A stretch of 64,000 nucleotides of DNA. Source: Antechinus flavipes (lineage: Eukaryota). The stretch is from the NCBI RefSeq assembly GCF_016432865.1, contig NC_067398.1:78802001-78866000 (forward strand). Direction: 5' to 3'. Positions 10,211-35,132 of the stretch are shown here, piece after piece. The translations under genes were made by a program, and so were the position numbers. The notes below the pieces were generated by a model, which was given only the letters and a program-made list of their open reading frames with translations, was not told the origin of the DNA and ran no database searches. Numbering within the stretch: the first letter of the stretch is position 1; each line of letters opens with the position of its first letter.

Positions 10211-10729
10211 TGGGAAGACTGGTAGCCAGGTAGGCAATCCAACCTTTACCATAAATTAATCCCACTACAAATTCCTGACATGGGTACGCAGTTCTTGCCT
10301 GAAGACCTACTCCTTAGTAAGGTAGCTCAGTCTACTTGAGAACATTCCTAATTATGAGGAAGCTTTTCCCTACCAAGCCTCATTATTCCTATGCCTGCCA
10401 AGCAGAAAAGGTGCAGTTTCCTCACGACAGCCTTTCCAATAAACAGCAGCCCGTCTCCTCCAGGTTGACCCAGAGCCATCAATGACAGTTTTGAAGCTTC
10501 CTAGTTGCCCTTATTCTAGTTCCTCTTCCTTTAACCGAGTTGTGTGGCAATAACACAAAGCCCTCAGCCGTCCTACCCCTTCCAGCAAGTATCTCGTTTG
10601 CCTTTTTTTTTAATGTGTTTACCAGAACTGAAAACCAGGCACTTATTATTTTCAATCGAATTAAATGGTGAGCTCAATGACCAATAGTGGGTCGGGACAG
10701 TCAGGAAAGGAGCCGAGATTTCTTTTTGA

Positions 10730-11350
10730 GTTCTAGATAGGGAGAAGACCGCGAGAGGCTGGGAGAAAACCGGAAAGATCGACGGTACCGTACGGCTGGA
10801 AGAGAGCGTGCCTCGAGGCCGGCGCAGCTCAGGGTCCCCAGCGGGACTGGGAGACCAGACCTCGGACTGCGCCCGGAGGAGGGAGGGAAAGAGATTTGCG
10901 CGGAGAGAAACCGGGGCGGAAGGGGCGGAGCCGAGAGAAGCCCGGGAAGGAGGGGTGGTGAGGGGCCTGGGTAGGGGCGGGCCGAAAGAAGCTCGATAGG
11001 AGGGACGGGGCCAGAGGCTCTGTGAGGGCGGAGCTTAGGAGAAGTGGCAGCTCCACCCTCCGGCCGGGGCGCGTCCCCTGATGCATCTCGTGGTCCAGCG
11101 CGCTGTGCCCTGACACTAAGCTCGGTGCTCCCAGGCCGAGGAGAGGAGGGCATGGCCCCAGAAGCTCCTGTTCCGGTAAGAGCGGCTACAGAGGCCCGGG
11201 CCAAGGGAGGCGGAGCCCTTGAGGAGCTCCCGGCCTGCGGGAGGGACAGCTCCCGGCCTTAGGGTCCGGCACTCGAGGATTCCGGATCCTGAGCTGGGAG
11301 GGATCAGAAAGAAGCTATCGAGACCTCACCCTTTGTTTTACAGGGCGGGA
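10730..11350 (+). promoter_or_regulatory. CpG-island promoter and exon 1 region of gene 2
   Basis: CpG-rich; multiple GGGGCGG boxes at ~10900-11035; gagggcATGg at 11152; donor GTAAGA at 11176; intron start homologous to genes 1 and 3 (gcctgcgggagggacagctc). Confidence 0.8.
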
Positions 11351-14300
11351 AACTGAGGCCCAGAGAGATGGGTCACTCGGCTAAGCCGGAGTGCTGACAG
11401 GGGATTTGATCCCATGCCTCCCAGACCCCAACCCAGTGCCTCCCAGTCCTAACTCCGAGTGGGCGAAGAGGGCTCGCGGTAGAGGGGACTCCGCCAGGGT
11501 CAGGGAGAGGTAGGATTCTTGTAGCCACACAGTCAGTGGGCGCGCACGCAGGCACTGTGCTGCTAAGCCTTGACATGCAAAGAAAGGCCCTCCACATAGA
11601 GGGAAGCCGCAGAAGCCACAGGGGCCATAGAGAATAGAGTGGAAAGCCCCTCCTAGGATGGAAGGCCTCGCATTTTGAGGCACCAGGAAAGCCAGTGGGA
11701 AGAGTTGTTTACTTTGGGATCCCTGAGGTCATAGAGTATAGTGTGCTTTCTAGAGCCCAAGTTGGGGTGCCAAAATGTACCCTTGGGACTAGCCCTCTCT
11801 GGAGGATCTTGGGACCAGCCTGAGCCCTTGGGCTTACAAGAGGAGTGATGGATAAGGCAGGGACCCTCCTGGATGGTCAGATATGGAGTCCATTTGTTTC
11901 AAGATCTCTCAGCCCTAAATACCTTAGTACAATTACATCACTACAACACGTGCTGACTCTAGTATGATTACATCACCACAGCACACTGCTCATGTGCTAA
12001 CTATAAGCACCTGCTATTAATATGTAAATGCCTCTTTTACTGTTGTATCTCTGCTTCAGGTAAAACACAGATTGTCACACCCTCTCCCCCACACTCCACT
12101 TGTCAGGACGGCTGAGACACCCCCTCCTCCAAGGGGAGATGAGAGCCAAACCATTTTCAGCAAGTTCCATCTGGGCTAAAGCGGCTTCTACCTCACCCAT
12201 AGTTCCCCCACTGTCTGTGGCTCTACAATAGAGAGCTTGCTGCAGCCTTTTGACCTGGGGAGTTACCAGGTTGCAAGTAACCCTCTTGGCCCCTCTTGGG
12301 AACAAGGACCAGAGAGGAGAGAGACCTTTGGCCAGCACCCACCATTGGGACACTGCCACAGAACTGGCAGGAGGTGACCAGGTGGATAGAGGAGAAAGGG
12401 GGTTACCCATGCCATCTGCTAGGAAGAGGGCATCAGGTGGCTCTGTGGCCACGCCGGGTTGAAGATACCCTTTGGGACAGGTTAGCCAGTAGGCATTGGG
12501 AGGCAGCTGAGAAGTCTGGGTTGGATAAGTAGATCTGAGAACCATCTGCATAGACATGATAGTGAAGTCTTTGGGAACTGATGGAATAGATAAAGAAATA
12601 GAAAAGAAGTTATTAGGGGGACGCCTGTAGCAACAATCCCGGAGAAAGGAGTGGTTAAGTCAGGTGGGAAGAGAAGCAGCCTGAAAACTTAGAGAGAGGA
12701 CTCAAGGAGAGGAGGATGGACAGTGTCAGAGCCACAGGGGGTCACCAATGGGGAGGAATGAGAAAAAGCCATTACATTTGAGGACTTTGGAGACTTCACT
12801 TTGAGTTGGATGATGAGGACAGAAATCAGGCACCGAATGTAGAAAGTTGTCCGCTCAAAGGAGGCAAAATACCGGACAGTAGCCAAATCCCAAAGGGGCA
12901 GTTTGCTGGAGAAGATAGGATAGAATGGGATCCAAAATGCAGGAAGAGGGGACTGCCTCTTCACAAGGAGAAAGGACATCAATACCTGGGAGAAGGAGGG
13001 GAAGGATGGGGAGGAAGGGGGAGGCATCCAAGTGAGGAAAGACAAGGAGAGGACAAGTAGAAGCTCTCAGCAAATGGTCCATATTTTTCAGCAAAATATG
13101 AAGCAAGCTTCTCAGCTGAGAGGATCCAAAGAAGAGGAGCCATGGGAATTTTGAGATAGGACTGCAGGTGAGGGCCCATAATTTTAGGGAAAGGGAGAGT
13201 TGAGACATTAGGCTTCAGGGGCAGAGACTCAGCCGCCTCGGAGTTTAGGGATTTAGAGCAGGGCTGCAGCTGGAAATTATCTCTTGGTCCACTTGCTAGA
13301 GAGGCAGGTAATTTTCCTGAGGTTCCCAGGTTATTCCCCTGCAGTTTTCCTCAACAAACCTTTCACAGAGTGCATTCTCTTTTACCATTCTCTGCCCATA
13401 TTGTTGCTACGATACACTTGGGAAGAAAAGCCTTGTAGTTTTGGAAAATGAACACTCAGAGCTTCTCTAGTTGCCTGTTATAAAAGAATTTAAAACAAAC
13501 CTGGTGGGAATCCGTTTTTAGCATCTACATTGTATGAAAGAAATGGAATAGAAAAAGATATTTTCTGAATTAGTGATGCAAAATGAAAGTATGACTCATG
13601 CTTGTGGTTCTAGGTGGCTGTGACATTTGATGATGTGACCATGTATTTCACAGAGCAGGAGTGGGAGACCTTGGAGGAGTGGCAAAAGGAGCTTTACAAG
13701 CATGTCATGAAGACCAACTATGAGACCTTGGTCTCACTGGGTAAGATGTTTTCATCGGGAACTTTGATGGTGTCTTATAGAATCAGATTCAATATCATCC
13801 AGCTCTTGTATCACAACCTGAAAGTTCTTCTAGAAACCCCATCCTGATTGGTCCTTTCCACAATTTCACTTTATTTTCAAGTTTTATTATTACTTTTGTT
13901 TTTTAACAATAGTAATTTCTCAGTATCCCTTGTAACAAAGAAAACCAGTTAAGCAAAGCAAATCAACAAACTGACCTCAAATATAGTGTAGGTAACATTC
14001 TACCTTGAGCTTCTCTTTATTTACTGAGTAGAGGGAAATGTTTTATGTCATCTGTTCTCCTATATCAAGGTTGGACATTGCAATTCATATGAATGTTAAT
14101 TTATATAATTGTCATTCTCTGTCATTTCTATAAGTTTTCCACTGTTTTCTCTGAATTCCTTCATCTTCTTTTTTTTTTAATGGAGCAGTAATATTTCATT
14201 ACTTCAGTATACCATTTGTTCACCAATCAATAGCTACCTGTCTTGTTTACAGTTTTGTGTTAACACAGATACTACAGATATTTTAGTTTATATAGCTTTT

Positions 14301-17300
14301 GTGAAAATCTCTGGACCTTAATGACTAGCTGGATAGGTAGCAATATTATTGAATTCAATAAATTTCCGAAGTACAAGATACAATGCAAAAAAGAAAGAGT
14401 AAATTTTAATAGCAACCAACATTATCTACTTGAAATTAATCATCTGGAATTGGAAAAGTTTGTTTAGTGCCCCTACTAAGGCTGTCATGCTGGTCTAACT
14501 TGGCCCCCTTGCCATTTCAGATCTCTAAAGCTTTATTTATTATACCCTATAGCATTTTTTTCCAGTGGTGTTTACTGAGCCTGGCTAATATTAATCTCTG
14601 CCATGAGATCTCAGGTACTATTATAAATCATCTCTCTCACTGCTTCTCATTTCAGAGTCCCCAAAATATCTACTATTAAAAATAGCAACTCAAATTTTTA
14701 GCTTGCCATGTATCCTACAGTTTTCCATTTTAACAGCTTTAGTGTATGATAACTCAAAAACAAATTTTTCCTAGTATGTCCAACAAGAATTTCATTATGT
14801 CTTCCTATGCAGCAGCATGGAAAAACATTAACTCCACTAGTCAATTGATTGATGAATGCTTGTTTCATGCTTACTGTGAAAGGCACTTTATTAAATTCTG
14901 TAGGGAAAACAGAAGCATAAGCTACAATATGTATTTGTCCTCATGAAGCTTATATTCTGTTTGGGGAGATCATTAACAGTATATAAACATATAAAGACAT
15001 AACAATACAAAAGATCAATAACAGTTCACTTCAGCAATAAAATACATATCAGGAGGCAGTACCTTATTAATTGTCAAATATATAAGTGCAACCAATATAC
15101 AGAAAAAGAAAAAAATAATTGTGGTCTTGAGCATGCTAGAAAGAATACACAGAGGAGGATAATTAGGTCTAAAATATATATTTATATTTGATGAGCAAAA
15201 ATCGCAAAAAATCCAAAGAGGATGTAAAATGATAGTGCCCAATAATTTGAACCAAAAGTTATTTCCTGGCAACTAAATTACTGGCTGTAAAGGAAATCAA
15301 AAAATAAAAATAATTATAATTGGTAGTATTTCATCACTGTTCACAAAAGGTGTGAAGAATTTAATGGGCAACTTAAAGCCAAATAGATTAGGCATCTCTC
15401 TAGGAACCTAATACCAAGATGCAAACAGTCATTCTGATTTTATCTCCATAAAATCTCCATTTATTATAGTGTTCACAAAACTTGTGCTTCTGGTGACCTA
15501 AAGGAAAACAAACTTATTTACCATTTTGTGACCTGTTTGTCCAGGCTATGCCATTTCCAAACCAGATTTGATAACCCAGATTGAACAAGGGGAAGAACCA
15601 TTCGTCAGAGATCAGGGACGCTTGAGTACAAGGGAACTGGCCATTGGACACAGAGGCAGCTGTTTTCTGGTGAGTGTGAAAAAGTGAAAGGAGTGAAATT
15701 CAAGAGGCCATCTTCAGGTTCTCCTCCTTCTAGGACTTAAATCTTCCTGTCATGTCCAACTACTTTGGGTTTGATTTAGGATTGGCCCTAGCTTCATCAG
15801 CTATCAGAGCTCCAGACCCCAAACAATTTCACTATCATATGTGTCATACACAAACAGTAGCTCTATCCTGTTCTTCTTCTGATCAAGAAACCCAAGATTC
15901 TGAAGTTGCTTAGAGTTTTTCCAGTTACTTAGAGTTCAGCTTATTTTTAATAATCTTTTCATTTATATTGATTGTATTTATTTGTTTAGTTCCACTGAGT
16001 TAATTCTGCATCAATAGACAAAAATCTTTTCTTTTTCCTGACTTCCTCATAATCAGCCTTTCCCAAATTTAGTATAATTCTATTACATTCATTTACCATA
16101 GGGTGGTTTTTTAGCCATTTCCCAATTGATTGGCAGCCACTTTGTTTCCAGTCTTTTGCTGCCACAAAAAGTGCTACTATAAATATTGATGTACACACAC
16201 ACACACACACACACTGTCTGTCTCTCTTCTCTCTTTCACCTTAATCTAGCATACCAAACAGAAATATCATACATCTTTCCTACATATCTATATTAAATGA
16301 CTAATATTTGATAATCATTCTTACTTTGTGAATGACACTTTAAATTCTAAAGATATATAGAAGCGCACCTCACCAGAAGTATTTATCACCATAAATTACA
16401 TTTTACTTTTCAAAGAACTTGTCTACTTAGGGATATCTAAAATGTAAACAAGCAGGACATAAATATTTGTAAATGCAAATAATAATGTACTACCTCAGTA
16501 TAAGAGAAATCAGAAGGCAATGCAATCATTTCTTCCCAAACACATATATCCAGCAATAACTGCTATAAATGTGTAGTTGATATAAAGAACACTGTTGTCC
16601 ATAGTGGATTCCAAAAAGGCTTCACAAAAGAATCAAGAAGTTTTCAAAAGCAAGATTTGAATTTAAAAGTTGCAAAATGTTTAAACAGGATGTGAAATAT
16701 AATGGCTGATAAACAGAAAATTTCTGATGACTTTCATCATAAAAATTTTGAGAAAATGTAGGTTTTTTGTGTGTAGGGGTTATTTTATTCATTGCATTTA
16801 TATTTATATACTTATCATATAGTAGGCATTTAATAACGTATTGACTATTGATTAGGATAGAAACTAGTTTTGAAGGGATTAAATTGAACCGTGGTAATCT
16901 GTGTTTATCAGATACTCTATCTCCAGTACTACATCCCAGTGTTAGAAACTTAACTCAAGGCCCAAGTAATTTTCTCCACTTGTAGTCTGTATTTTACAAC
17001 TTACATTCCTATATTGTCTAGGAATAACTTGGTGTGATAGAAACTGGGAAGAACATAGAGAATATAGAAGAACTATAGAATTGAGAGAATTAAGAAATCC
17101 AGATTCAAATGATAGCTCATATTATATACAGTATGGTTCATGAAAAAGTCAGAATCATAACATGTCTATGAACTTCAGTTTCCTTATCTTTAAAATCGGG
17201 ATAATATACTTGGACTGCCAATTTCACAAGGTTGTATTAATCAGAATGTTTTAAAAAACCTTAAAGCATCATATAATATGAATTTGAGGGAGTTGATGCA

Positions 17301-20300
17301 GTTTCTAGCTATAAACAGCACAGCCCCATCCCACTGAGTCAATGAGCAATAGAAACTGCCACCAAGAACATTATTGGGAATATTTCAGTTGAGGTCAGTT
17401 ACTTTCAAACCATAGTGATTTGCAGATTTGTTTTGTGACAGACCAGCACATCTTGAATCCCCTTGAGCCAACCTTTAGGAATTTTCGAAACAAAAGCAAT
17501 TTTAGCTGACTTTATTAAATCAATATAAACTTCACAGTCCTTTTAAAAGTGCAGGCAATGTGGGGAATCAAACAACTCGTTGGTAGCTAAGAGCCAAATG
17601 AAGGAGACAGCACTCTGCTACAGTGGGAGCACCCAAATCCTGGGTTTATATATATATACGTGTGTGTGTGTGTGTGTTCCTGTATCTTGTACCTTAATCT
17701 GAATTAAAAGAAACAAAACTGCTTCTTTGTGGCCTCTTCAGGCTGTGCCATCTCCAAGCCAGACTCAATAACCCAGATTGAACAAGAAGAAAAGCCAGTC
17801 ATCAGCCATCAGGGGAACTCGGAAACAGGAGGTTATGCAGTCTGCTTCAGTGATAATGAGCATCCTGATGTGAAGAGCATAGAAGTGCAGCCATTTGGGG
17901 GTGAGTTAGGAGGAGGGGAAAGAGTGAAACTCAAGGTGGCACATTCTGATTTTTGCTCCCTAATAAGTCTTGCTTTCTTGATGGTCTGAGCTAGAACCTG
18001 ATATCAGGGCAACACTGAGCTTCAAGAGATCTCATAAAGAAATCATTCAGGGAAGGCTACAAGGCATCTTTACTTTAATCTTTACTTATACACACAGAGA
18101 TGAGTTCTGTTCTATTTTTCCTATCATGATTGGGAAATCTGAACTCCTGAATTCCAAGAAGTAAAATGAAACTTGTCATTGGTTAAGGAGGCCAGTGTTC
18201 AGCATCGGTAGGAAAGACATTACCTCATTTTTTGCTGTTGCTTGCCAATAGATAAATAAGTCAAGGACTCTATAGGGGTTAAAATTTAAGATTTTGCCCC
18301 CTATGAAGAAGGGTTGGCTTCCCTGTTAAATCTGCAAGTTAAAGGTTTTTTTCCTATTAAGCTAATGGAATTACCATTTTTTTTAATTATCAAAAGTAAG
18401 CATACTTGAAATAAAAAATAAGATAAAAGCCCTAAGAGAAGGGTGATTGTATCCATTTCAAGACAAAAAGATTGTGCTTATTTGATTTTCTTTCCCAAGA
18501 GTAGCTTCACCACGTCCAGTAACCAAAGTTTTCTTCTGAAAACATTTGTTCCAACATGAGTAAGAATAAAGAAAGAACAATCTTGACCTTGTCCTGGAGC
18601 CCAGTTTCAAATCTGGGCAGGTAGGAAGAAGGCAGAGAGTTAATTCTTCCTGATCTTTTTCTTCTTATGACTATTAGAGAGACTGTACAGATTTGTAGAA
18701 AGAGAAGTGTTCCTCAGAGTGCCTCTCCACCTTTTCCTTTTATCAGCTGTGTGATTATGGGCAACTTATATCTCTCTAAACTTCAATTTCTCATCTATAA
18801 ATAAGAATCACATTTAGGTTCTATACAAAATATTCTATTACAGTACCTCATTAATCACTCTGAACATCAAATAAGGTAATATACGTAACATGCACTACAT
18901 ATGTTATTACATGTCTGTTATTACAAAATATGTGGCAGGAACTTTATAGCACTATATCAACATGAAACAAGCCTATTGCTCATAAACATTCTCCATGTCT
19001 TCATGTCTTTCTTCAGGGAGAGAAATCTTTGGATTCACAAGTTTGAGGCTTAATGTTACAAGAGGTGTCAAAGCGTTATGTCTTTTGGGTCATGGCTCAC
19101 CTGGTTTATGTGCATCCAATTTAAATCTTCTCTAAACAGTGTGATTATATTTGGTTATATTAATGAAGAAGTGAATTTAAGGAAGGAATGGGAATTAAAT
19201 TTGAGAAAGACAGGCAGGGAATTTCAGTACTGGCCAAGTCAGGTAAAGACATGGAAAGATAAATTCAAGAAACATTTTAAATGTCTTACATTTATATAGA
19301 GCTTTATATCCACAAAAGACTATGCAGCATATCATTTGGTTCACACAACAACCCTGATCTTAATCCAGCTGAGGTTTAGAGTAGTCACACTCTACTGGAA
19401 TTCAAATCCAGTCATTAAATACCAGTTTCAGTGCACTTTCTAATACTCCATGTTATGCAGAGACCTGAATCAGTGCTAGGAGAGAGGAAAATATCAATAA
19501 ACCATGATGCTAAGACTGTTCCTGGATCTAACTCTGACCATCTCTCCTTAGCCCTTAGCCTCCTAAATCAATTATTTTCTCTCATCACAAGCTCCATTCC
19601 CCTCTCCATTCTCAAGACTATTACTCCTTTTCTGATGTCACATTCGTCCCTCACTGAAGCAAGGAAATCCATCCAAAGGCTTTCCCTCTTCTACTCCAAA
19701 CTTCCTGTTCATTTCCAAATTCTCCCATACTCCCATCTCACCCAAGTACCTTGCCTCTCATTGTACTGAAAAAATTAAGGCCACAATCTCCTCCTCTTTT
19801 TTTTCTCTCTAGCCCCTTGACAATATTCCCTATTCTCTTTTTCTTAATTCTACTTTTTTGATACTGAGGTGACCTTTATTCCTTCCCCTCCTATCTTTTC
19901 CATCAGACTACCCCTGCTCTCATCTGTTTTCACACTTTCTAAACTTACACTTTGTCGCTATCTATTGTTTCTTCCCCTAGTGCCTCCAAACATATCCAAC
20001 TCTCTTCAGTCATCAAAAAAATCCTCATAGAACCTTACGGTTTCCTCCTAGATATCTCCTTTTCCCCCAACCTCCTAGGAAAAAATTATCCCCACTTGTT
20101 ACCTCTTCTTTCTTCACCCTCACTCATTCCTCATCCCTTTGCAATTGGGCTTCTCGCTCCCTTCTAAGGAAACTGCCCTTTTTAAAATTTCTAATGATCT
20201 AATATCCAATTCAGGTCCTTTTTTTTTCAGTCCTCTTCTGCTGTGTGACTCTGTAGTCTTTGACACTGCTGACCACTCTCTCTCTTCTTTGGGCTTTTGT

Positions 20301-23300
20301 GACACTACCTCTCCTACTTCTACCTACTTATCCTCCACAATATATCCCAAGACTTTTACTCCAGACCATCTTCTCTCCACATTTTGTCTCTATCACATGG
20401 ATTTAATTATCCTTCTGCAGATGTCTCCAAGATCTGGCTCCCCAGCTCTAGTGTCTTTCCTGAGTTTTCCAAAATGCCCACTGAACACTTTAGACTGGAT
20501 TTTCATGGACATCTCAAGCCCCAAATGTCCAAAACAGAAGGCATTATCTTCCTTCCCACCTCCCTTCTTGCAGACTTGCCTTTCTTTGCTAAGGATGCCA
20601 CCATTCCTGGATCTCGTCAGTGTTATCCTCAAAGTCTTAGTCTCCCTCACCCATTTACCAATAACTTGTCTCCCTGCCTCAAGACCATGCCAGCTGCAGC
20701 CCAGCCCCCAGATACCACTGCCAAAAGAGCATTTCAGGAGCTCGGAAGTAAACTGTCTCTGGGTTTAAGGCTCTTCGTAGCCTGGCCCGAACCTCTCCTT
20801 CCAAATTCCTTATGCCTTCCTTCTCTTCCCTCTCACCAAAGTGACCTCCTCCATGTCCCTCCTCTAAGCCTTTGCCTTAGCTGCTCTCAATCCCTGAAAT
20901 ACTCTCATTTCTAGCCTCACCTCTGCTTTCTAGGATCCCTCATTTCTTTCAGAACTCCAGCTCCTAGTGCCCTCCCTCCCTATCTTTGTTTTTACTTTCC
21001 TTGTATTATTAGATGTTTATTCTAAATCTCTTAAATATGTATTTGTCTTTCCCCACAGAATTTAAGGCCCTTACATTAGGAACATTTTTTCTTTGTTTCC
21101 CCTGAGGCTGGCACATATAGGTACTTAGTGCTTGTTGCTTATGTGATTGATAGTAGTAGTTTCATAGATTTCAAGTTGCATGAGACCTGAGATCATAAAA
21201 TCAGCCCTGTTGTTTTACAGATAAGGCAAAGCAATCTCATTCAGAAGTAAATGCCAATTGATCCATGAACCCATGGTCACACAGGGAGTAAACATCAGAG
21301 CCAAGATTTAAACCTGGTTGCTGAGTCCCAAGTCCCTTGGCAAAGTCTCTTGGACCTTCTTGTAGAGCAGCCATGAGTTGCTGATCAGGTCTTTGTTTTT
21401 CATTCCAGGGGATTCTGGATCTTCAAGACAAGAAGAGAGCCACAGACATGATCTTCAAAACCAGAACTGGGCTGGGTCCTTGCCATTCCACTGCAGTGTG
21501 TGCAGCAAGGGCTTCACTCACAAGTCTCAACTAGCCAATCACGTTAGAATTCACAGGCCAAAAAAACACTTCCAGTGCACCAAGTACGAAAAGAATTTTG
21601 CCCAAAAGACCCAACTGCTCCGGCACCAGCACCTGCAAACGGGGGAGAGGCCCTTCCAGTGCTCTGAGTGTGACAAGAGCTTCCCAGCAAAGGGGGACAT
21701 GAAGCAGCCTGAAAACTTAGAGAGAGGACTCAAGGAGAAGAGGAGGATGGACAGGAGGTCATCAACGGTGAGGAATGAGAAAAAGCCATTACATTTGAGG
21801 ACTTTGGAGACTTCATTTTGAGTTGGATGATGAGGACAGAAATCAGGCACCGAATGTAGAAAGTTGTCCACTCAAAGGAGGCAAAATACAGGACAGTAGC
21901 CAAATCCCAAAGGGGCAGTTTGCTGGAGAAGATAGGATAGAATGGGATCCAAAATGCAGGAAGAGGGGACTGCCTCTTCACAAGGAGAAAGGACATCAAT
22001 ACCTGGGAGAAAGAGGGGAAGGAGGGGAAGGAAAGAGGGGAGGCATCCAAGTGAGGAGAGACAAGGAGAGGATAAGTAGAAGCTCTCAGCAAATGGTCCA
22101 TATTTTTCAGCAAAATATGAAGCAAGCTTCTCAGCTAAGAGGAGCCATGGGAATTTTGAGATAGGACTGCAGGTGAGGGCCCATAATTTTAGGGAAAGGG
22201 AGAGTTGAGACATTAGGCTTCAGGGGCAGAGACTCAGCCGCCTCGGAGTTTAGGGATTTAGAGCAGAGCTGCAGCTGGAAATTATCTCTTGGTCCACTTG
22301 CTAGAGAGGCAGGTAATTTTCCTGAGGTTCCCAGGTTATTCCCCTGCAGTTTTCCTCAACAAACCTTTCACAGAGTGCATTCTCTTTTACCATTCTCTGC
22401 CCATATTGTTGCTACCACACACTTGGGAAGAAAAGCCTTGTAGTCTTGGAAAATGAACACTCAGAGCTTCTCTAGTTGCCTGTAATAAAAGAATTTAAAA
22501 CAAACCTGGTGGGAATCCGTTTTTAGCATCTACATTGTATGAAAGAAATGGAATAGAAAAAGATATTTTCTGAATTAGTGATGCAAAATGAAAGTATGAC
22601 TCATGCTTGTGGTTCCAGGTGGCTGTGACATTTGATGATGTGACCATGTATTTCACAGAGCAGGAGTGGGAGACCTTGGAGGAGTGGCAAAAGGAGCTTT
22701 ACAAGCATGTCATGAAGACCAACTATGAGACCTTGGTCTCACTGGGTAAGATGTTTTCATCGGGAACTTTGATGGTGTCTTATAGAATCAGATTCAATAT
22801 CATCCAGCTCTTGTATCACAACCTGAAAGTTCTTCTAGAAACCCCATCCTGATTGGTCCTTTCCACAATTTCACTTTATTTTCAAGTTTTATTATTACTT
22901 TTGTTTTTTAACAATAGTAATTTCTCAGTATCCCTTGTAACAAAGAAAACCAGTTAAGCAAAGCAAATCAACAAACTGACCTCAAATATAGTGTAGGTAA
23001 CATTCTACCTTGAGCTTCTCTTTATTTACTGAGTAGAGGGAAATGTTTTATGTCATCTGTTCTCCTATATCAAGGTTGGACATTGCAATTCATATGAATG
23101 TTAATTTATGTAATTGTCATTCTCTGTCATTTCTATAAGTTTTCCACTGTTTTCTCTGAATTCCTTCATCTTCTATTTTTTTTAATGGAACAGTAATATT
23201 TCATTACTTCAGTATACCATTTGTTCACCAATCAGTAGCTACCTGTCTTGTTTACAGTTTTGTGTTAACACAGATACTACAGATATTTTAGTTTATATAG

Positions 23301-25185
23301 CTTTTGTGAAAATCTCTGGACCTTAATGACTAGCTGGATAGGTAGCAATATTATTGAATTCAATAAATTTCCGAAGTACAAGATACAATGCAAAAAAGAA
23401 AGAGTAAATTTTAATAGCAACCAACATTATTTACTTGAAATTAATCATCTGGAATTGGAAAAGTGTTTAGTGCACCTACTAAGGCTGTCATGCTGGTCTA
23501 ACTTGGCCCCCTTGCCATTTCAGATCTCTAAAGCTTTATTTATTATACCCTATAGCATTTTTTTCCAGTGGTGTTTACTGAGCCTGGCTAATATTAATCT
23601 CTGCCATGAGATCTCAGGTACTATTACAAATCATCTCTCTCACTGCTTCTCATTTCAGAGTCCCCAAAATATCTACTATTAAAAATAGCAACTCAAATTT
23701 TTAGCTTGCCATGTATCCTACAGTTTTCCATTTTAACAGCTTTAGTGTATGATAACTCAAAAACAAATTTTTCCTAGTATGTCCAACAAGAATTTCATTA
23801 TGTCTTCCTATGCAGCAGCATGGAAAAACATTAACTCCACTAGTCAATTGATTGATGAATGCTTGTTTCATGCTTACTGGGAAAGGCACTTTATTAAATT
23901 CTGTAGGGAAAACAGAAGCATAAGCTACAATATATATTTGTCCTCATGGACCTTATATTCTGTTTGGGGAGATCATTAACAGTATATAAACATATAAAGA
24001 CATAACAATACAAAAGATCAATAACAGTTCACTTCAGCAATAAAATACATGTCAGGAGGCAGTACCTTATTAATTGTCAAAAAATCCAAAGAGGATATAA
24101 AATGATAGTGACCAATAATTTGAACCAAAAGTTATTTCCTGGCAACTAAGTTACTGGCTGTGAAGGAAATCAAAAAATAAAAATAATTATAATTGGTAGT
24201 ATTTCATCACTGTTCACAAAAGGTGTGAAGAATTTAATGGGCAACTTAAAGCCAAATAGGTTAGGCATCTCTCTAGGAACCTAATGCCAAGATGCAGACA
24301 GTCATTCTGTTTTATATTTCCATAAAATCTCCATTTATTATAGTCTTCTCAAAACTTGTGCTTCTGGTGACCTAAAGGAAAACAAACTTATTTGCCATTT
24401 TGTGACCTGTTTGTCCAGGCTATGCCATTTCCAAACCAGATTTGATAACCCAGATTGAACAAGGGGAAGAACCATTCGTCAGAGATCAGGGACGCTTGAG
24501 TACAAGGGAACTGGCCATTGGTTCCAGGGCTGATGACCCTTGTGGCTTGAAGAGGACACAGAGGCAGCTGTTTTCTGGTGAGTGTGAAAAAGTGAAAGGA
24601 GTGAAACTCAAGAGGCCATCTTCAGGTTCTCCTCCTTCTAGACTTAAATCTTCCTGTCATGTCCAACTGCTTTGGGTTTGATTTTAGGGCTGGTCCTAGC
24701 TTCAAGAGATCAACTACCAGAACTCCAGACCCCAAACAATTTCACTATCATATGTGTCATACACAAACAGGAGCTCTATCCTGTTCTTCTTCTGATCAAG
24801 AAACCCAAGATTCTGAAGTTGGAGAAAGAAAAGCAAACCTAAATATGACAGTCAAATGTTAGCCTCATGAGGGTAGGTTCTATCATGTACTGTTAACTTC
24901 ATTATTGATTTTCCAGTTACTTAGAGTTCAGCTTATTTTTAAAAATCTTTCCATTCATATTGTGTATGTTTATTCTTTTAGTTCCACCTATTTTAATTCT
25001 GCATCAATAGACAAAAATCTTTTCTTTTTGCTGACTTCCTCATAATCAGCTTTTCCCAAATTCAGTATAATTCTATTACATTCATTTACTATAGGGTGGT
25101 TTTTTAGCCATTTCTCAATTGATTGGCAGCCACTTTGTTTCCATTCTTTTGCTACCACAAAAAAATGCTACTATAAATATTGATG

Positions 25186-25222
<37 letters not shown>

Positions 25223-25228
25223 TCTCTC

Positions 25229-25262
<34 letters not shown>

Positions 25263-28200
25263 ACCTTTAACTAGTATACCAAACAGGAATATCATACATC
25301 TTTTCTGCCTATCTATATCAAATGACTAATATTTGATAATCATTCCTACTTTGTGAACGACACTTTAAATTCTAAAGCTATATAAGTGTGTACATCGCCA
25401 GAAGAATTTATCACCATTATTACATTGTATTTTTCAAAGAACTTGTCTACTTAGGGATACCTAAAATGTAAACAAGCAAGACATAAATATTTGTAAATGC
25501 AAATAATAATGCACTACCTCAGTATAAGAGAAATCAGAAGGCCATGCAATCATTTCTTGCCAAACACATATATCCAGCAATAATTGCTATAAATGTGCAG
25601 TTGATATAAAGAACACTGTTGTCCATAGTGGATTCCAAAAAGGCTTCACAAAAGAATCAGGAAGTTTTTAAAAGCAAGATTTTACTTTAATAGTTGCAAA
25701 AAGTTCCAACAGGATATGAAATAAATAATACCTGATAAAAGCCAGAAAATTTCTGATGACCTTCATCATAATAGTTTTGAGAAAATGTAGGTTTTTTGTG
25801 TGTAGGGATTTTTTTATTCATTGCATTTGTATCTATATATCTATCATATAGTAGGCATTTAATAACTTATTATTAATTAGGATAGAAACTAGATTTGAAG
25901 GCATTAAATTGAACCAGGACAATCTCTGCTTATCAGATTCCCCATCTCCAGTACTACCTCCCAGTGTTGGAAGCTTAACTCAAGGCCCAAGTAATTTTTT
26001 CAACCTATAGTCTATACTTTACAACTTACACTCATATACTGTCTAGGAACAATTTAGTTTGATAGAAACTGGGAAGAACATAGCCTAGAAAGAATTAGGA
26101 AACCCAGATTTAACTGATAGCTCAAATTATATGTAGTATGGACCATGAACAAGTCACAATTACATCATGTCTATGAGCCTCAGTTTCCTGTCTTTAAAAT
26201 GGGGAGGGGCAGCTAGGTGGAGCAATGGATAAAGCAGCAGCCCTGAAGTCAGAAGGACCTGAGTTCAAATCTGGTCCCAGACACTTAACACTTCCTGTCT
26301 GTATAACCCTGAGCAAGTCACTTAACCCCAATTGCCTCAGCAAATAAATAAATAAATAAATGAAATAGGGATGATATACTTGGACTGTCAATTTCACAAG
26401 GTTGTATTAATCAGAATGTTTTAAAAATCTTAAAGCATCATATAATATGAATTTGAGGGAGTTGATGCAGTTTCTAGTTCTAAACAGCACAGCCCCATCC
26501 CACTGAGTCAATGAGCAATAGAAACTGCCACCAAGAACATTATTGGGAATATTTCAGTTGAGGTCAGTTACTTTCAAACCATAGTGATTTGCAGATTTGT
26601 TTTGTGACAGACCAGCACATCTTGAATCCCCTTGAGCCAACCTTTAGGAATTTTCGGAACAAAAGCAATTTTAGCTGACTTTATTAAATCAACATAAACT
26701 TCACAGTCCTTTTTTTTTTTCCAAGTCCTGCACTTTTGTGCAGGCAGTGTGGGAAATCAAACAACTCGTTGGTAGCTAAGAGCCAAATGAAGGAGACAGC
26801 ACTCTGCTTCAGTGGGAGCCCCCAAATCCTAGGTTTATGTATATACATGTGTGTGTGTGTGTGTGTTCCTGTATCTTGTACCTTAATCTGAATTAAAAGA
26901 AACAAAACTGCTTCTTTGTGGCCTCTTCAGGCTGTGCCATCTCCAAGCCAGACTCAATAACCCAGATTGAACAAGGAGAAAAGCCAGTCATCAGCCATCA
27001 GGGGAACTCAGAAACAGGAGGTTATGCAGTCTGCTTCAGTGATAATGAGCATCTTGATGTGAAGAGCATAGAAGTGCAGCCATTTGGGGGTGAGTTAGGA
27101 GGAGGGGAAAGAGTGAAACTCAAGGTGGCACATTCTGATTTTTGCTCCCTAATAAGTCTTGCTTTCTTGATAGTCTGAGCTAGAACCTGATATCAGGGCA
27201 ACACTGAGCTTCAAGAGATCTCATAAAGAAATCATTCAGGGAAGGCTACAAGGCATCTTTACTTTAATCTTTACTTAAACACACAGAGATGAGTTCTGTT
27301 CTATTTTTCCTATCATGATTGGGAAATCTGAACTCCTGAATTCCAAGAAGTAAAATGAAACTTGTCATTGGTTGAGGAAGCCAGTGTTCAGCATCGGTAG
27401 GAAAGACATTACCTCATTTTTTGCTGTTGCTTGCCAATAGATAAATAAGTCAAGGACTCTATAGGGGTTAAAATTTAAGATTTTGCCCCCTATGAAGAAG
27501 GGTTGGCTTCCCTGTTAAATCTGCAAATTAGGAAAAAGGCAAAGGTTTTTTTCCTATTAAGCTAATGGAATTACCATTTTTTTAATTATCAAAAGTAAGC
27601 ATATTTGAAATAAAAAATAAGATAAAAGCCCTAAGAGAAGGGTGATTGTATCCATTTCAGGACAAAAAGATTGTGCTTATCTGATTTTCTTTCCCAAAAG
27701 TAAGTTCACCATGTCCAGTAACCAAAGTTTTTTCCTGAAAACATATGTTCCAACATGAGTGCCCATGGCCACATAGGGAGTAAGCATCAGAGCCAAGACT
27801 TAAACCTAGTAACTGGTCCAAAGGTCCTCAAAGTCTCTTGAACCTTCTCTCAGGCAGCCATGAGTTGCTGACCAGGTCTTTGTTTTTCATTCCAGGGGAT
27901 TCTGAATCTTCAAGACAAGAGGAGAGCCACAGACATGATCTTCAAAACCAGAACTGGGCTGGGCCCTTGCCATTCCACTGCAGTGTGTGCAGCAAGGGCT
28001 TCACCCACAAGTCTCAACTAGCCAATCACATTAGAGTTCACAGGCCAAAAAAACACTTCCAGTGCACTGAATGTGAAAAGAACTTTGCCCAAAAGTCCCG
28101 ACTGCTCCGACACCAGCGCCTGCACACGGGGGAGAGGCCCTTCCAGTGCCCTGAGTGTGACAAGAGCTTCCACCAGAAGGGCCATCTGCTCAAGCACCTG

Positions 28201-28605
28201 CCCCTGCACACAGGGGAGAGACCCTTCCAATGCCCCGAGTGTGACAAGAGCTTCCGAGCAAAGGGGGACCTGAAGGCCCACCAGCGCCGGCACAGGGAGG
28301 AGAAGCCATTCTCCTGCAGCGAGTGTGGGAAGGGCTTCACCACGCATCATTACCTCACTGATCACATCAGAATACACACCGGGGAGAAGCCCTTCCACTG
28401 CCCCGAGTGTGGCAAGAGCTTCCGCATGAAAGCGGACATGAGAGTCCACCAGCGCAGACACAGCAAGGCCAGGTCGTTCTGCTGCAGCGAGTGCGAGAAG
28501 GCCTTCCCCAAGCAGTCTGAACTCACAGACCACAGCAAGGTGCACACCAAGAAACAGCACTACAAGGGCCTGCTCTGTGGACTGATGGACCTGGACTGGG
28601 GCTGA
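11152..28605 (+). CDS. KRAB-C2H2 zinc-finger gene 2 (ZNF786-like) with internally duplicated KRAB modules; simplest intact product 392 aa, 7 fingers
   Basis: Exon 1 11152-11175 (MAPEAPVP) joined to 22619-22745 (KRAB-A), 24419-24577 (KRAB-B a), 26931-27089 (KRAB-B b) and 27896-28605 (7 C2H2, ends [10 protein letters not shown]) gives 1179 nt in frame. This is the only promoter/exon 1 found upstream of either module. Which exons are actually used is not known. Confidence 0.75.
12570..13215 (-). mobile_element. L2 LINE RT-region fragment in intron 1 of gene 2 (duplicated at ~21705-22215)
   Basis: Minus-strand remnants of the L2 'HSTETALxKV...NG.FS' region; + strand gaggaatgagaaaaagccattacatttg. 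Confidence 0.65.
15950..16190 (-). mobile_element. L1 ORF2 C-terminus/3' fragment (duplicated at ~24950-25190)
   Basis: Minus-strand translation [25 protein letters not shown] resembles the L1 ORF2 C-terminus. Confidence 0.75.
19431..20920 (+). mobile_element. L2 LINE ORF2 (RT) remnant
   Basis: Translation [13 protein letters not shown]...VFDTADHSL resembles the L2 RT motif STETALxKVTNDL...AFDTVDH; pyrimidine-rich sense strand. Confidence 0.8.
22619..28605 (+). CDS. Second, intact KRAB-A + 2x KRAB-B + 7-finger module of gene 2 (no promoter or exon 1 of its own)
   Basis: Exons 22619-22745, 24419-24577, 26931-27089, 27896-28605; canonical AG/GT, correct phases, no stops. Confidence 0.88.
26206..26362 (+). 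mobile_element. WSINE1-type tRNA SINE, present only in duplicate copy 2
   Basis: GGGGCAGCTAGGTGG...ccccaattgcctcagc plus (AAAT)n tail; imperfect TSD aaatgggga/aaataggga; empty site at ~17195 in copy 1. Confidence 0.88.
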
Positions 28606-35004: not shown

Positions 35005-35132
35005 NNNNNNNNNNNNNNNNNNNNNNNNNNNNNNNNNNNNNNNNNNNNNNNNNNNNNNNNNNNNNNNNNNNNNNNNNNNNNNNNNNNNNNNNNNNNNNNN
35101 NNNNNNNNNNNNNNNNNNNNNNNNNNNNNNNN
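35005..35132. other. Assembly gap (128 N)
   Basis: Run of N; true size unknown. Confidence 1.

What the first reader, a model, noticed from the sequence alone, without database searches (positions are those of the whole stretch)
15545..15669. A 34-bp 'frameshift' deletion makes the first KRAB-B exon phase-compatible with the duplicated KRAB-A exon
Seen: against its twin (24419-24577, 159 nt) this exon lacks ttccagggctgatgacccttgtggcttgaagagg, so it is 125 nt and ends in phase 0 instead of 1. Spliced to the next exon (17742) it stops after 9 codons (TAA 17769-17771), giving a 101-aa KRAB-only product that is a likely NMD target. Spliced to 22619 it is in frame: 24+127+125+127+159+159+710 = 1431 nt = 476 aa, KRAB-A-B-A-B-B-7 fingers. 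Inference: this is a second independent route to a double-KRAB protein, and it makes 15545 and 17742 productive only as mutually exclusive exons.
Basis: partly seen in the sequence, partly recalled or inferred. Interest (0 to 1): 0.78.

Follow-up and report, generated by a model that had tools for sequence, protein, structure and literature searches.

The report
Frameshift deletion in duplicated KRAB-B exon
One of two copies of a small repressor-domain exon in a marsupial (Antechinus flavipes) zinc-finger gene has lost 34 bases; this most likely broke an old two-repressor-domain reading frame that a related species still has, and did not create a new protein form.

Summary
Exon 15545-15669 (125 nt) equals its twin 24419-24577 (159 nt) minus 34 nt. 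Joined to 17742 it stops at TAA 17769-17771 (101 aa). Joined to 22619 it gives an open 1431-nt, 476-aa frame.

The interpretation lacks support. The window is Antechinus flavipes. The gene carries an old intragenic tandem duplication, shared with Sarcophilus and Sminthopsis and absent in wombat. Sminthopsis RefSeq annotates the ancestral product as one frame: exon 1, KRAB-A, B1, B2, junction exon J, KRAB-A', B1', B2', fingers. Both of its B1 copies are 159 nt.

In an 8-sequence alignment, only Antechinus copy 1 lacks the 34 nt. It is the only break in the equivalent 660-aa Antechinus frame.

The longest Antechinus protein on record (407 aa) starts at an ATG inside J and has one KRAB. No coding sequence is called on the upstream unit. 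Sarcophilus broke the same unit differently: lost start codon, 1-nt deletion, stop in J.

The exon would have to skip two exons with stronger acceptors to reach 22619. About a third of random frameshifting deletions here would give the same phase match.

An earlier follow-up in this scan (s1-204721) had already described this duplication as an old, partly decayed dasyurid feature.

The parts
11152..11175 (+). Exon-1 coding part ([32 protein letters not shown]), donor GTAAGA at 11176, phase 0
   Evidence: It is homologous to the gene-3 exon-1 region. Sminthopsis has MAPVAPVS at the same place.
13614..13740 (+). KRAB-A exon, upstream copy (127 nt, phase 0 to 1); acceptor TAG instead of CAG
   Evidence: Pfam KRAB PF01352, E=5.9e-20. 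It is 127/127 identical to 22619-22745.
15545..15669 (+). The finding: upstream KRAB-B-like exon B1 with the 34-nt deletion (125 nt, phase 1 to 0). The deletion point lies between 15647 and 15648.
   Evidence: It is the only one of 8 aligned B1 sequences with the gap.
17742..17900 (+). Upstream second KRAB-B-like exon B2 (159 nt, phase 1 to 1). After B1d it is read out of frame, and stop TAA falls at 17769-17771.
   Evidence: There are three differences from B2'.
21409..21767 (+). Junction exon J: a truncated finger exon fused to former intron 1 (359 nt, phase 1 to 0). ATG 21699-21701 is the start of the RefSeq coding sequence.
   Evidence: P0001 begins [23 protein letters not shown]|VAVTF, which shows the 21767>22619 junction. 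The coding range is 6907 nt, equal to 21699-28605.
22619..22745 (+). KRAB-A' exon, downstream copy (127 nt, phase 0 to 1)
24419..24577 (+). Downstream B1' exon (159 nt, phase 1 to 1). 24522-24555 is the 34-nt segment missing from the upstream copy.
26931..27089 (+). Downstream B2' exon (159 nt, phase 1 to 1)
27896..28605 (+). Terminal exon with seven C2H2 fingers and the stop codon

Best explanation
The 34-nt loss is a derived, lineage-specific frameshifting deletion, probably microhomology-mediated. It lies in the upstream copy of a KRAB-B-like exon of a ZNF425/ZNF786-type KRAB zinc-finger gene of Antechinus flavipes.

The gene carries an old intragenic tandem duplication found in dasyurids. 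The ancestral product was one long double-KRAB protein: exon 1, A, B1, B2, J, A', B1', B2', seven fingers. Sminthopsis still annotates this product.

In Antechinus the deletion is the single lesion that interrupts this frame. If the exon is spliced as in the ancestral pattern (B1 to B2 to J), translation from the exon-1 ATG ends after 101 codons in B2. The upstream KRAB unit then becomes a long upstream ORF in the 5' leader, and such mRNA is a likely NMD substrate. The protein that remains is the annotated 407-aa single-KRAB form, starting at an ATG in exon J.

The frame match with KRAB-A' is a by-product of the deletion length, not a selected feature.

Shown here: the deletion, its polarity, the frame consequences, the intact ortholog, the independent decay in Sarcophilus, and the annotated coding start.

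Inferred: that the shortened exon is still included together with B2, and that no selection acted on the new phase.
For: - Species and annotated product: P0001 is XP_051840530.1, Antechinus flavipes, 407 aa, 100% identical to the terminal exon. Its N-terminus is coded by J from ATG 21699 and spliced 21767>22619.
- It is the longest product on record for the gene. No other coding sequence is called in the 10 kb upstream, which holds A, B1d and B2.
- No 476-aa or 607-aa relative appeared in a search covering 224-712 aa.
- Sminthopsis XP_074138805.1 (P0477, 822 aa) reads MAPVAPVS-A-B1(53 aa)-B2-J-A'-B1'-B2'-fingers, with two Pfam KRAB hits. Its locus L005 has both B1 exons at 159 nt.
- With B1' used in place of the deleted exon, the Antechinus path is a complete 660-aa frame, 89% identical and colinear with Sminthopsis. 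The deletion is therefore the only break.
- Alignment A1: the gap occurs only in Antechinus copy 1 among 8 sequences.
- Wombat has a single unit.
- Sarcophilus L001 has the same duplication with a full-length B1. It also has ATG>ACG in exon 1, a 1-nt deletion in upstream KRAB-A, and a stop plus the wrong end phase in J.
- In the B1-B2 intron, orthologous copies are closer (91.9% and 94.0%) than paralogous copies (about 89-90%). Exon regions are homogenised within each species, which points to an old duplication with gene conversion.
- The acceptors of B2 and J have a pyrimidine fraction of 0.82, against 0.65 for A'.
- J evolves faster at non-synonymous sites than the terminal exon (dN/dS 0.40 against 0.14). 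J finger 2 has lost a Cys and a His in Antechinus.
Against: - No transcript reads were seen for Antechinus. The exon chain upstream of J in the RefSeq mRNA is not visible with these tools, so inclusion of B1d together with B2 is inferred.
- The upstream A and B1d exons are 100% identical to their twins, while flanks differ by 3-5%. That could mean continued constraint. Gene conversion, or past constraint, explains it equally well.
- Splice sites of B1d are intact.
- Two complete frames from the exon-1 ATG remain possible: 476 aa through B1d>A' and 607 aa by skipping B1d.
- The Sarcophilus lesions rest on a single assembly.
Confidence: 0.7

Rival explanations
1. The shortened exon is mostly skipped. 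Splicing goes A>B2>J>A', and the gene still makes a 607-aa double-KRAB protein. Inclusion of exon 15545 acts as a poison cassette exon that sends part of the transcripts to NMD.
For: Skipping B1d gives a complete 1824-nt, 607-aa frame. B1 was a symmetric 159-nt exon, so skipping it is frame-neutral. J keeps an open frame in Antechinus. Upstream exons stay identical to their twins.
Against: The longest product on record is 407 aa, not 607 aa. No such protein was found in a search covering that length. B1d splice sites are unchanged from the used twin. J finger 2 has lost zinc ligands.
Confidence: 0.15
2. The deletion re-phased exon 15545 so that direct splicing 15669>22619 gives a functional 476-aa KRAB-A-B-A-B-B-7-finger protein. 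Exons 15545 and 17742 are then used as mutually exclusive alternatives, policed by NMD.
For: The frame is open over 1431 nt. Both exons together give a stop 129 nt before the next junction. NMD-policed mutual exclusion is a known principle (FGFR2 IIIb/IIIc, Jones et al. 2001, listed as ref. 11 in PMC6071210).
Against: The splice needs a 6.9-kb intron and must skip two exons with stronger acceptors. J is used in the RefSeq model. No 476-aa product is on record. The deletion is derived and lineage-specific, in a unit that decays independently in Sarcophilus. By simple count, half of frameshifting deletions give end phase 0, and about 0.7 of those give no stop in 7 new codons, so chance alone gives about one in three. 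The two exons are not interchangeable in length, phase or downstream partner.
Confidence: 0.06
3. The deletion is an assembly or polishing error in one of two near-identical copies, or a polymorphism private to the reference animal.
For: The two copies are 97-99% identical around the exon, a setting in which assemblers can err. No independent reads were laid.
Against: It is a clean 34-nt loss with 2-nt microhomology, and the flanks carry copy-specific differences on both sides: 15520 and 15699. The RefSeq coding start in J is what a broken upstream frame predicts. DNA runs from several related organisms hold much of the 10-kb stretch, but the deletion itself was not examined in them.
Confidence: 0.07

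Closest known systems
Sminthopsis crassicaudata LOC141551258, XP_074138805.1 (P0477, 822 aa)
   Same: It is the ortholog, with the same intragenic duplication and exon order: A, B1, B2, J, A', B1', B2', fingers. It is 89% identical and colinear with the Antechinus path when an intact B1 is assumed.
   Different: Both of its B1 exons are 159 nt, and the whole double-KRAB frame is annotated as one protein. Antechinus has the 34-nt deletion and an annotated single-KRAB product.
Human ZNF333, the described double-KRAB zinc-finger gene (Tian et al. 2002, cited as ref. 42 in PMC8479281)
   Same: It has two KRAB modules ahead of a C2H2 array in one gene.
   Different: It is an unrelated locus, with no orthology shown. 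Here the upstream KRAB frame is interrupted in the species studied. The duplication here also copied part of the finger exon, which became an internal exon.
NMD-policed mutually exclusive exons such as FGFR2 IIIb/IIIc (Jones et al. 2001, ref. 11 in PMC6071210)
   Same: Including both exons shifts the frame and gives a premature stop.
   Different: In the known cases the two exons are interchangeable: same phase, same neighbours. Here they differ in length and phase and need different downstream partners. No transcript evidence exists here.
Poison exons and long upstream ORFs created by frameshifting lesions in 5' coding exons
   Same: An exon with intact splice sites now leads to a stop far upstream of later junctions. 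The main ORF starts downstream.
   Different: Regulated use and conservation, the hallmarks of functional poison exons, are not shown. The lesion is confined to one lineage.
ZNF425 / ZNF786-like KRAB zinc-finger cluster of marsupials (wombat P0122, tammar P0002, Dromiciops P0123)
   Same: These share the same gene family and the same A-B1-B2-finger order. B1 is full length in all of them.
   Different: They are single-unit genes. Wombat locus L004 has one A, one B1 and one finger exon.

Membership tests
KRAB C2H2 zinc-finger protein gene | KRAB A-box matching Pfam PF01352 | tested here: met
   Exon 13614-13739 has E=5.9e-20. P0001 has one KRAB stretch.
KRAB C2H2 zinc-finger protein gene | Tandem C2H2 finger array in the terminal exon | tested here: met
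   Seven C..C...H...H motifs lie at 27979-28483. P0001 has 7 zf-C2H2 stretches.
KRAB C2H2 zinc-finger protein gene | KRAB B-box in the exon after the A-box | tested here: inconclusive
   Pfam gives no hit for exons 15547-15669, 24421-24576 or 17744-17899. Its 42-position model matched only the A exon. The label rests on position and on the motif [15 protein letters not shown], which resembles the classical B-box (own knowledge).
KRAB C2H2 zinc-finger protein gene | Recruitment of TRIM28/KAP1 by the KRAB domain | not testable with these tools
   This needs a binding or repression assay.
Double-KRAB zinc-finger protein (ZNF333-type architecture) | Two KRAB A-boxes within one translated product | tested here: not met
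   The Antechinus product on record (P0001) has one KRAB. The ortholog P0477 has two. Antechinus frames with two KRABs (476 aa, 607 aa) exist only under splice paths that were not observed.
Mutually exclusive exons policed by frame and NMD | Inclusion of both exons gives a premature stop more than 50-55 nt before a later junction | tested here: met
   TAA 17769-17771 lies 129 nt before donor 17900, and further junctions follow.
Mutually exclusive exons policed by frame and NMD | The two exons are interchangeable: same phase, same flanking partners, homologous protein segments | tested here: not met
   One exon is 125 nt with phase 1 to 0, the other 159 nt with phase 1 to 1. Exon 15545 needs 22619 as partner, and 17742 needs 21409.
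Mutually exclusive exons policed by frame and NMD | Transcripts with one exon or the other are observed, and transcripts with both are rare or NMD-sensitive | not testable with these tools
The only RNA runs offered were from another organism.
Decaying duplicated exon (lineage-specific disabling lesion) | The lesion is derived relative to the paralog, the orthologs and the outgroup | tested here: met
   In alignment A1 the gap occurs only in Antechinus copy 1.
Decaying duplicated exon (lineage-specific disabling lesion) | Independent disabling lesions of the same unit in a related lineage | tested here: met
   Sarcophilus L001 has ATG>ACG, a 1-nt deletion in upstream KRAB-A, and a stop in J. 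This rests on one assembly only.

The most novel reading that the evidence does not exclude
The deletion converted two adjacent homologous KRAB-B-like exons into a frame-policed either/or switch. Transcripts from the exon-1 start would make either a 476-aa protein (A-B1d-A'...) or a 607-aa protein (A-B2-J-A'...). Both carry two KRAB modules but differ in the linker and in the extra fingers. Transcripts with both exons would be removed by NMD.
Probability: 0.05. Interest if true: 0.55.

Novelty: new member of a known kind. Interest (0 to 1): 0.22.

Why it matters
As a single lesion it matters little. It is one more case of a duplicated exon losing its frame.

Its value lies in the context. Dasyurid marsupials carry a zinc-finger repressor gene that duplicated its own body, and three lineages now show three states. 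The double-KRAB frame is intact in Sminthopsis, broken by one deletion in Antechinus, and broken at several places in Sarcophilus. This natural series could show whether a second KRAB module adds anything to repression, and how a gene falls back to a single module. In Antechinus that fallback uses a start codon at the duplication junction.

The finding also warns against reading purpose into a phase match that chance gives about one time in three.

Tried and rejected
- **Read evidence.** No letters of 17168-17207 were sent to any search tool afterwards. Later local scripts masked them or stopped at 17160-17167.
- **Metagenome scan.** An exact scan of metagenome contigs for the 30-nt deletion junction found nothing, as expected.
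- **Reaching the Sminthopsis protein.** The third protein search (P0121, region 165-530) did not list it. Neither did the representative search. It was finally found as a member of the P0001 cluster.
- **Exon identity as a sign of selection.** I considered the 100% identity of the upstream exons to their twins as a signal of selection on the new form. I rejected it as decisive. Flanks differ by 3-5%, exons of this gene evolve at about half the flank rate, and the tract is homogenised by gene conversion in all three species.
- **Sarcophilus model P0121.** I considered it as transcript evidence and rejected it. It reads the CpG island in another frame and bridges the 1-nt deletion, so it is a forced model.
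- **Spliced models.** Joined spliced models were translated only in local scripts for frame arithmetic and were not sent to any search tool. Searches used single exons or stored proteins by reference.

Full report
**What is there.** The window holds four KRAB zinc-finger genes on the + strand. The terminal exon of the second gene is 100% identical to XP_051840530.1, 'zinc finger protein 425-like' of Antechinus flavipes (P0001), so the window comes from that marsupial.

The second gene carries an intragenic tandem duplication. 12673-18561 matches 21701-27760, and 21270-21694 matches the start of the terminal finger exon, 27762-28181.

Each unit has three exons:
- a KRAB-A exon of 127 nt (13614-13740 and 22619-22745);
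- a first KRAB-B-like exon B1 (15545-15669 and 24419-24577);
- a second one, B2, of 159 nt (17742-17900 and 26931-27089).

Between the units lies exon J (21409-21767). It is a truncated finger exon fused to former intron sequence, and it has its own donor.

**The observation.**
- The upstream B1 is 125 nt and the twin is 159 nt.
- The other 125 nt and both splice sites are identical.

Local frame arithmetic gave the following. The exon-1 coding part was corrected to 11152-11175.
- With 17742 the frame stops at TAA 17769-17771 after 101 codons.
- With 22619 the frame runs 1431 nt to the normal stop, giving 476 aa.
- Skipping the exon and going through J gives 607 aa.

**Polarity and age.** The 159-nt form is ancestral. 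Gene 3 of the window aligns through the segment. Wombat, tammar and Dromiciops proteins have a full B1.

I fetched three loci: Sarcophilus (L001), Sminthopsis (L005) and wombat (L004).
- Wombat has a single unit.
- Sarcophilus and Sminthopsis have the same duplicated architecture, including J.
- All four of their B1 exons are 159 nt.
- In alignment A1 the 34-nt gap is seen only in Antechinus copy 1.

In the B1-B2 intron, orthologous copies are closer than paralogous ones: Af1-Sh1 91.9% and Af2-Sh2 94.0%, against about 89-90%. So the duplication predates the split of Antechinus and Sarcophilus. The regions around A, B1 and B2 are homogenised within each species, which indicates gene conversion. 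The deletion is therefore a young event, specific to the Antechinus lineage, on an old structure.

**What the ancestral gene encoded.** Sminthopsis RefSeq XP_074138805.1 (P0477, 822 aa) was found as a member of the P0001 cluster. It reads MAPVAPVS, A, B1, B2, J, A', B1', B2' and seven fingers in one frame, with two Pfam KRAB hits.

If the intact twin stands in for the deleted exon, the Antechinus path is a complete 660-aa frame, colinear with and 89% identical to the Sminthopsis protein. The 34-nt deletion is thus the only thing that interrupts this frame in Antechinus.

**What the annotation says.** P0001 starts [23 protein letters not shown]|VAVTFDDV. That is an ATG at 21699 inside J, followed by the junction 21767>22619.
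- It is the longest product on record for the gene.
- No other coding sequence is called in the 10 kb upstream, which holds A, B1d and B2.
- A search covering 224-712 aa found no 476-aa or 607-aa relative.

This is what one expects if the supported transcript either includes B1d with B2, which closes the upstream frame, or starts near J. It is not what one expects if 15669>22619 or 13740>17742 were well supported. This is an inference from annotation, not from reads.

**Decay in the sister lineage.** In Sarcophilus (one assembly) the same upstream unit carries three lesions:
- ACG in place of the exon-1 ATG;
- a 1-nt deletion in upstream KRAB-A;
- a stop and the wrong end phase in J.

In Antechinus, finger 2 of J has lost a Cys (TAC 21585-21587) and a His (CAA 21636-21638). 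J also has a higher dN/dS than the terminal exon, 0.40 against 0.14, though on small counts. Together these point to relaxed constraint on the upstream module in this subfamily.

**Why the proposed splice is unlikely.** The donor at 15669 would have to pass over B2 and J. Their acceptors have a pyrimidine fraction of 0.82 and their donors are GTGAGT and GTGAGG. The target, 6.9 kb away, is the weaker acceptor of A' at 0.65. The J donor is demonstrably part of the RefSeq model.

The phase match itself is weak evidence. By simple counting, half of all frameshifting deletions in a phase 1-to-1 exon end in phase 0. About 0.7 of those have no stop in seven new codons. Chance alone therefore gives about one in three.

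**What argues the other way.**
- The upstream A and B1d exons are identical to their twins, while the flanks differ by 3-5%.
- The splice sites are intact.
- Two complete frames from the exon-1 ATG remain possible.

Gene conversion and past constraint explain the exon identity, but they do not exclude present use.

**Limits.**
There is therefore no read-level test of the deletion or of any junction.
- Joined spliced models were only translated locally and never searched.

**Comparison with known systems.**
- Double-KRAB zinc-finger genes are known, for example human ZNF333 (cited in PMC8479281).
- Most of the 150 best database matches to the KRAB part of this protein show two or more KRAB-like stretches.
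- NMD-policed exclusive exons are also known, for example FGFR2 (cited in PMC6071210). The two exons here are not interchangeable, so that membership fails on a defining feature.

**Verdict.** The most likely reading, with probability about 0.7, is a degenerative frameshift that ended the double-KRAB frame in Antechinus and left a single-KRAB protein started from exon J. Interest is low to modest. The locus as a three-species series is more interesting than this lesion alone. An earlier follow-up in this scan (s1-204721) had already called the duplication an old, partly decayed dasyurid feature, and I re-derived and confirmed that here.

Noticed in passing
window 21699-21701: The RefSeq start codon lies in exon J, at the duplication junction. 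Sarcophilus has CTG at this place, and finger 4 of the terminal exon reads GAC CTG AAG. The ATG therefore looks like a derived Antechinus change that gives the downstream unit its own start. Sminthopsis lacks these five codons.
   Followed up: partly
L001 about 10440-10475; L001:12505-12630; L001:20365-20736: The Sarcophilus ortholog has ACG instead of the exon-1 ATG, a 1-nt deletion (AAAA to AAA) in upstream KRAB-A, and a TGA in the finger frame of J, with J ending in phase 1. This rests on one assembly (GCA_048593225.1).
   Followed up: partly
window 21585-21587 and 21636-21638: Finger 2 of exon J has lost a zinc-binding Cys (now Tyr) and a His (now Gln) in Antechinus. The Sminthopsis and Sarcophilus J exons keep both.
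   Followed up: partly
window 18561-21270: A 2.7-kb stretch between upstream B2 and J has no counterpart in the downstream unit. It is shared with Sarcophilus (Af 17208-21318 aligns to L001 16112-20230 at 90%), so it is an old insertion. Its nature (transposon?) was not examined.
   Followed up: no
window 15800-17160 / 24700-26200; L005 9783-10465 / 19428-20111: The same patchwork of identity between the two units occurs in all three dasyurids. Identity is about 97-99% around A, B1 and B2, and only 84-90% in the B1-B2 intron. Gene conversion tracts therefore seem to be anchored on the exons.
   Followed up: partly
L001 10001-10480 (protein P0121): The submitter's Sarcophilus model (KAM9095225.1, 530 aa) gets its first 160 or so residues by reading the CpG island in another frame, and it bridges the 1-nt deletion in KRAB-A. 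It looks like a forced gene model and has no Pfam KRAB hit.
   Followed up: partly
(library of representatives): Most of the 150 best matches to the KRAB-A/B1/B2 part of P0001 have 2 to 6 matched stretches. Predicted proteins with several KRAB modules are therefore common in databases. How many are gene-fusion artefacts is unknown.
   Followed up: no
window 35005-35132: A run of N lies just upstream of the CpG-island promoter of gene 3. It was left untouched.
   Followed up: no
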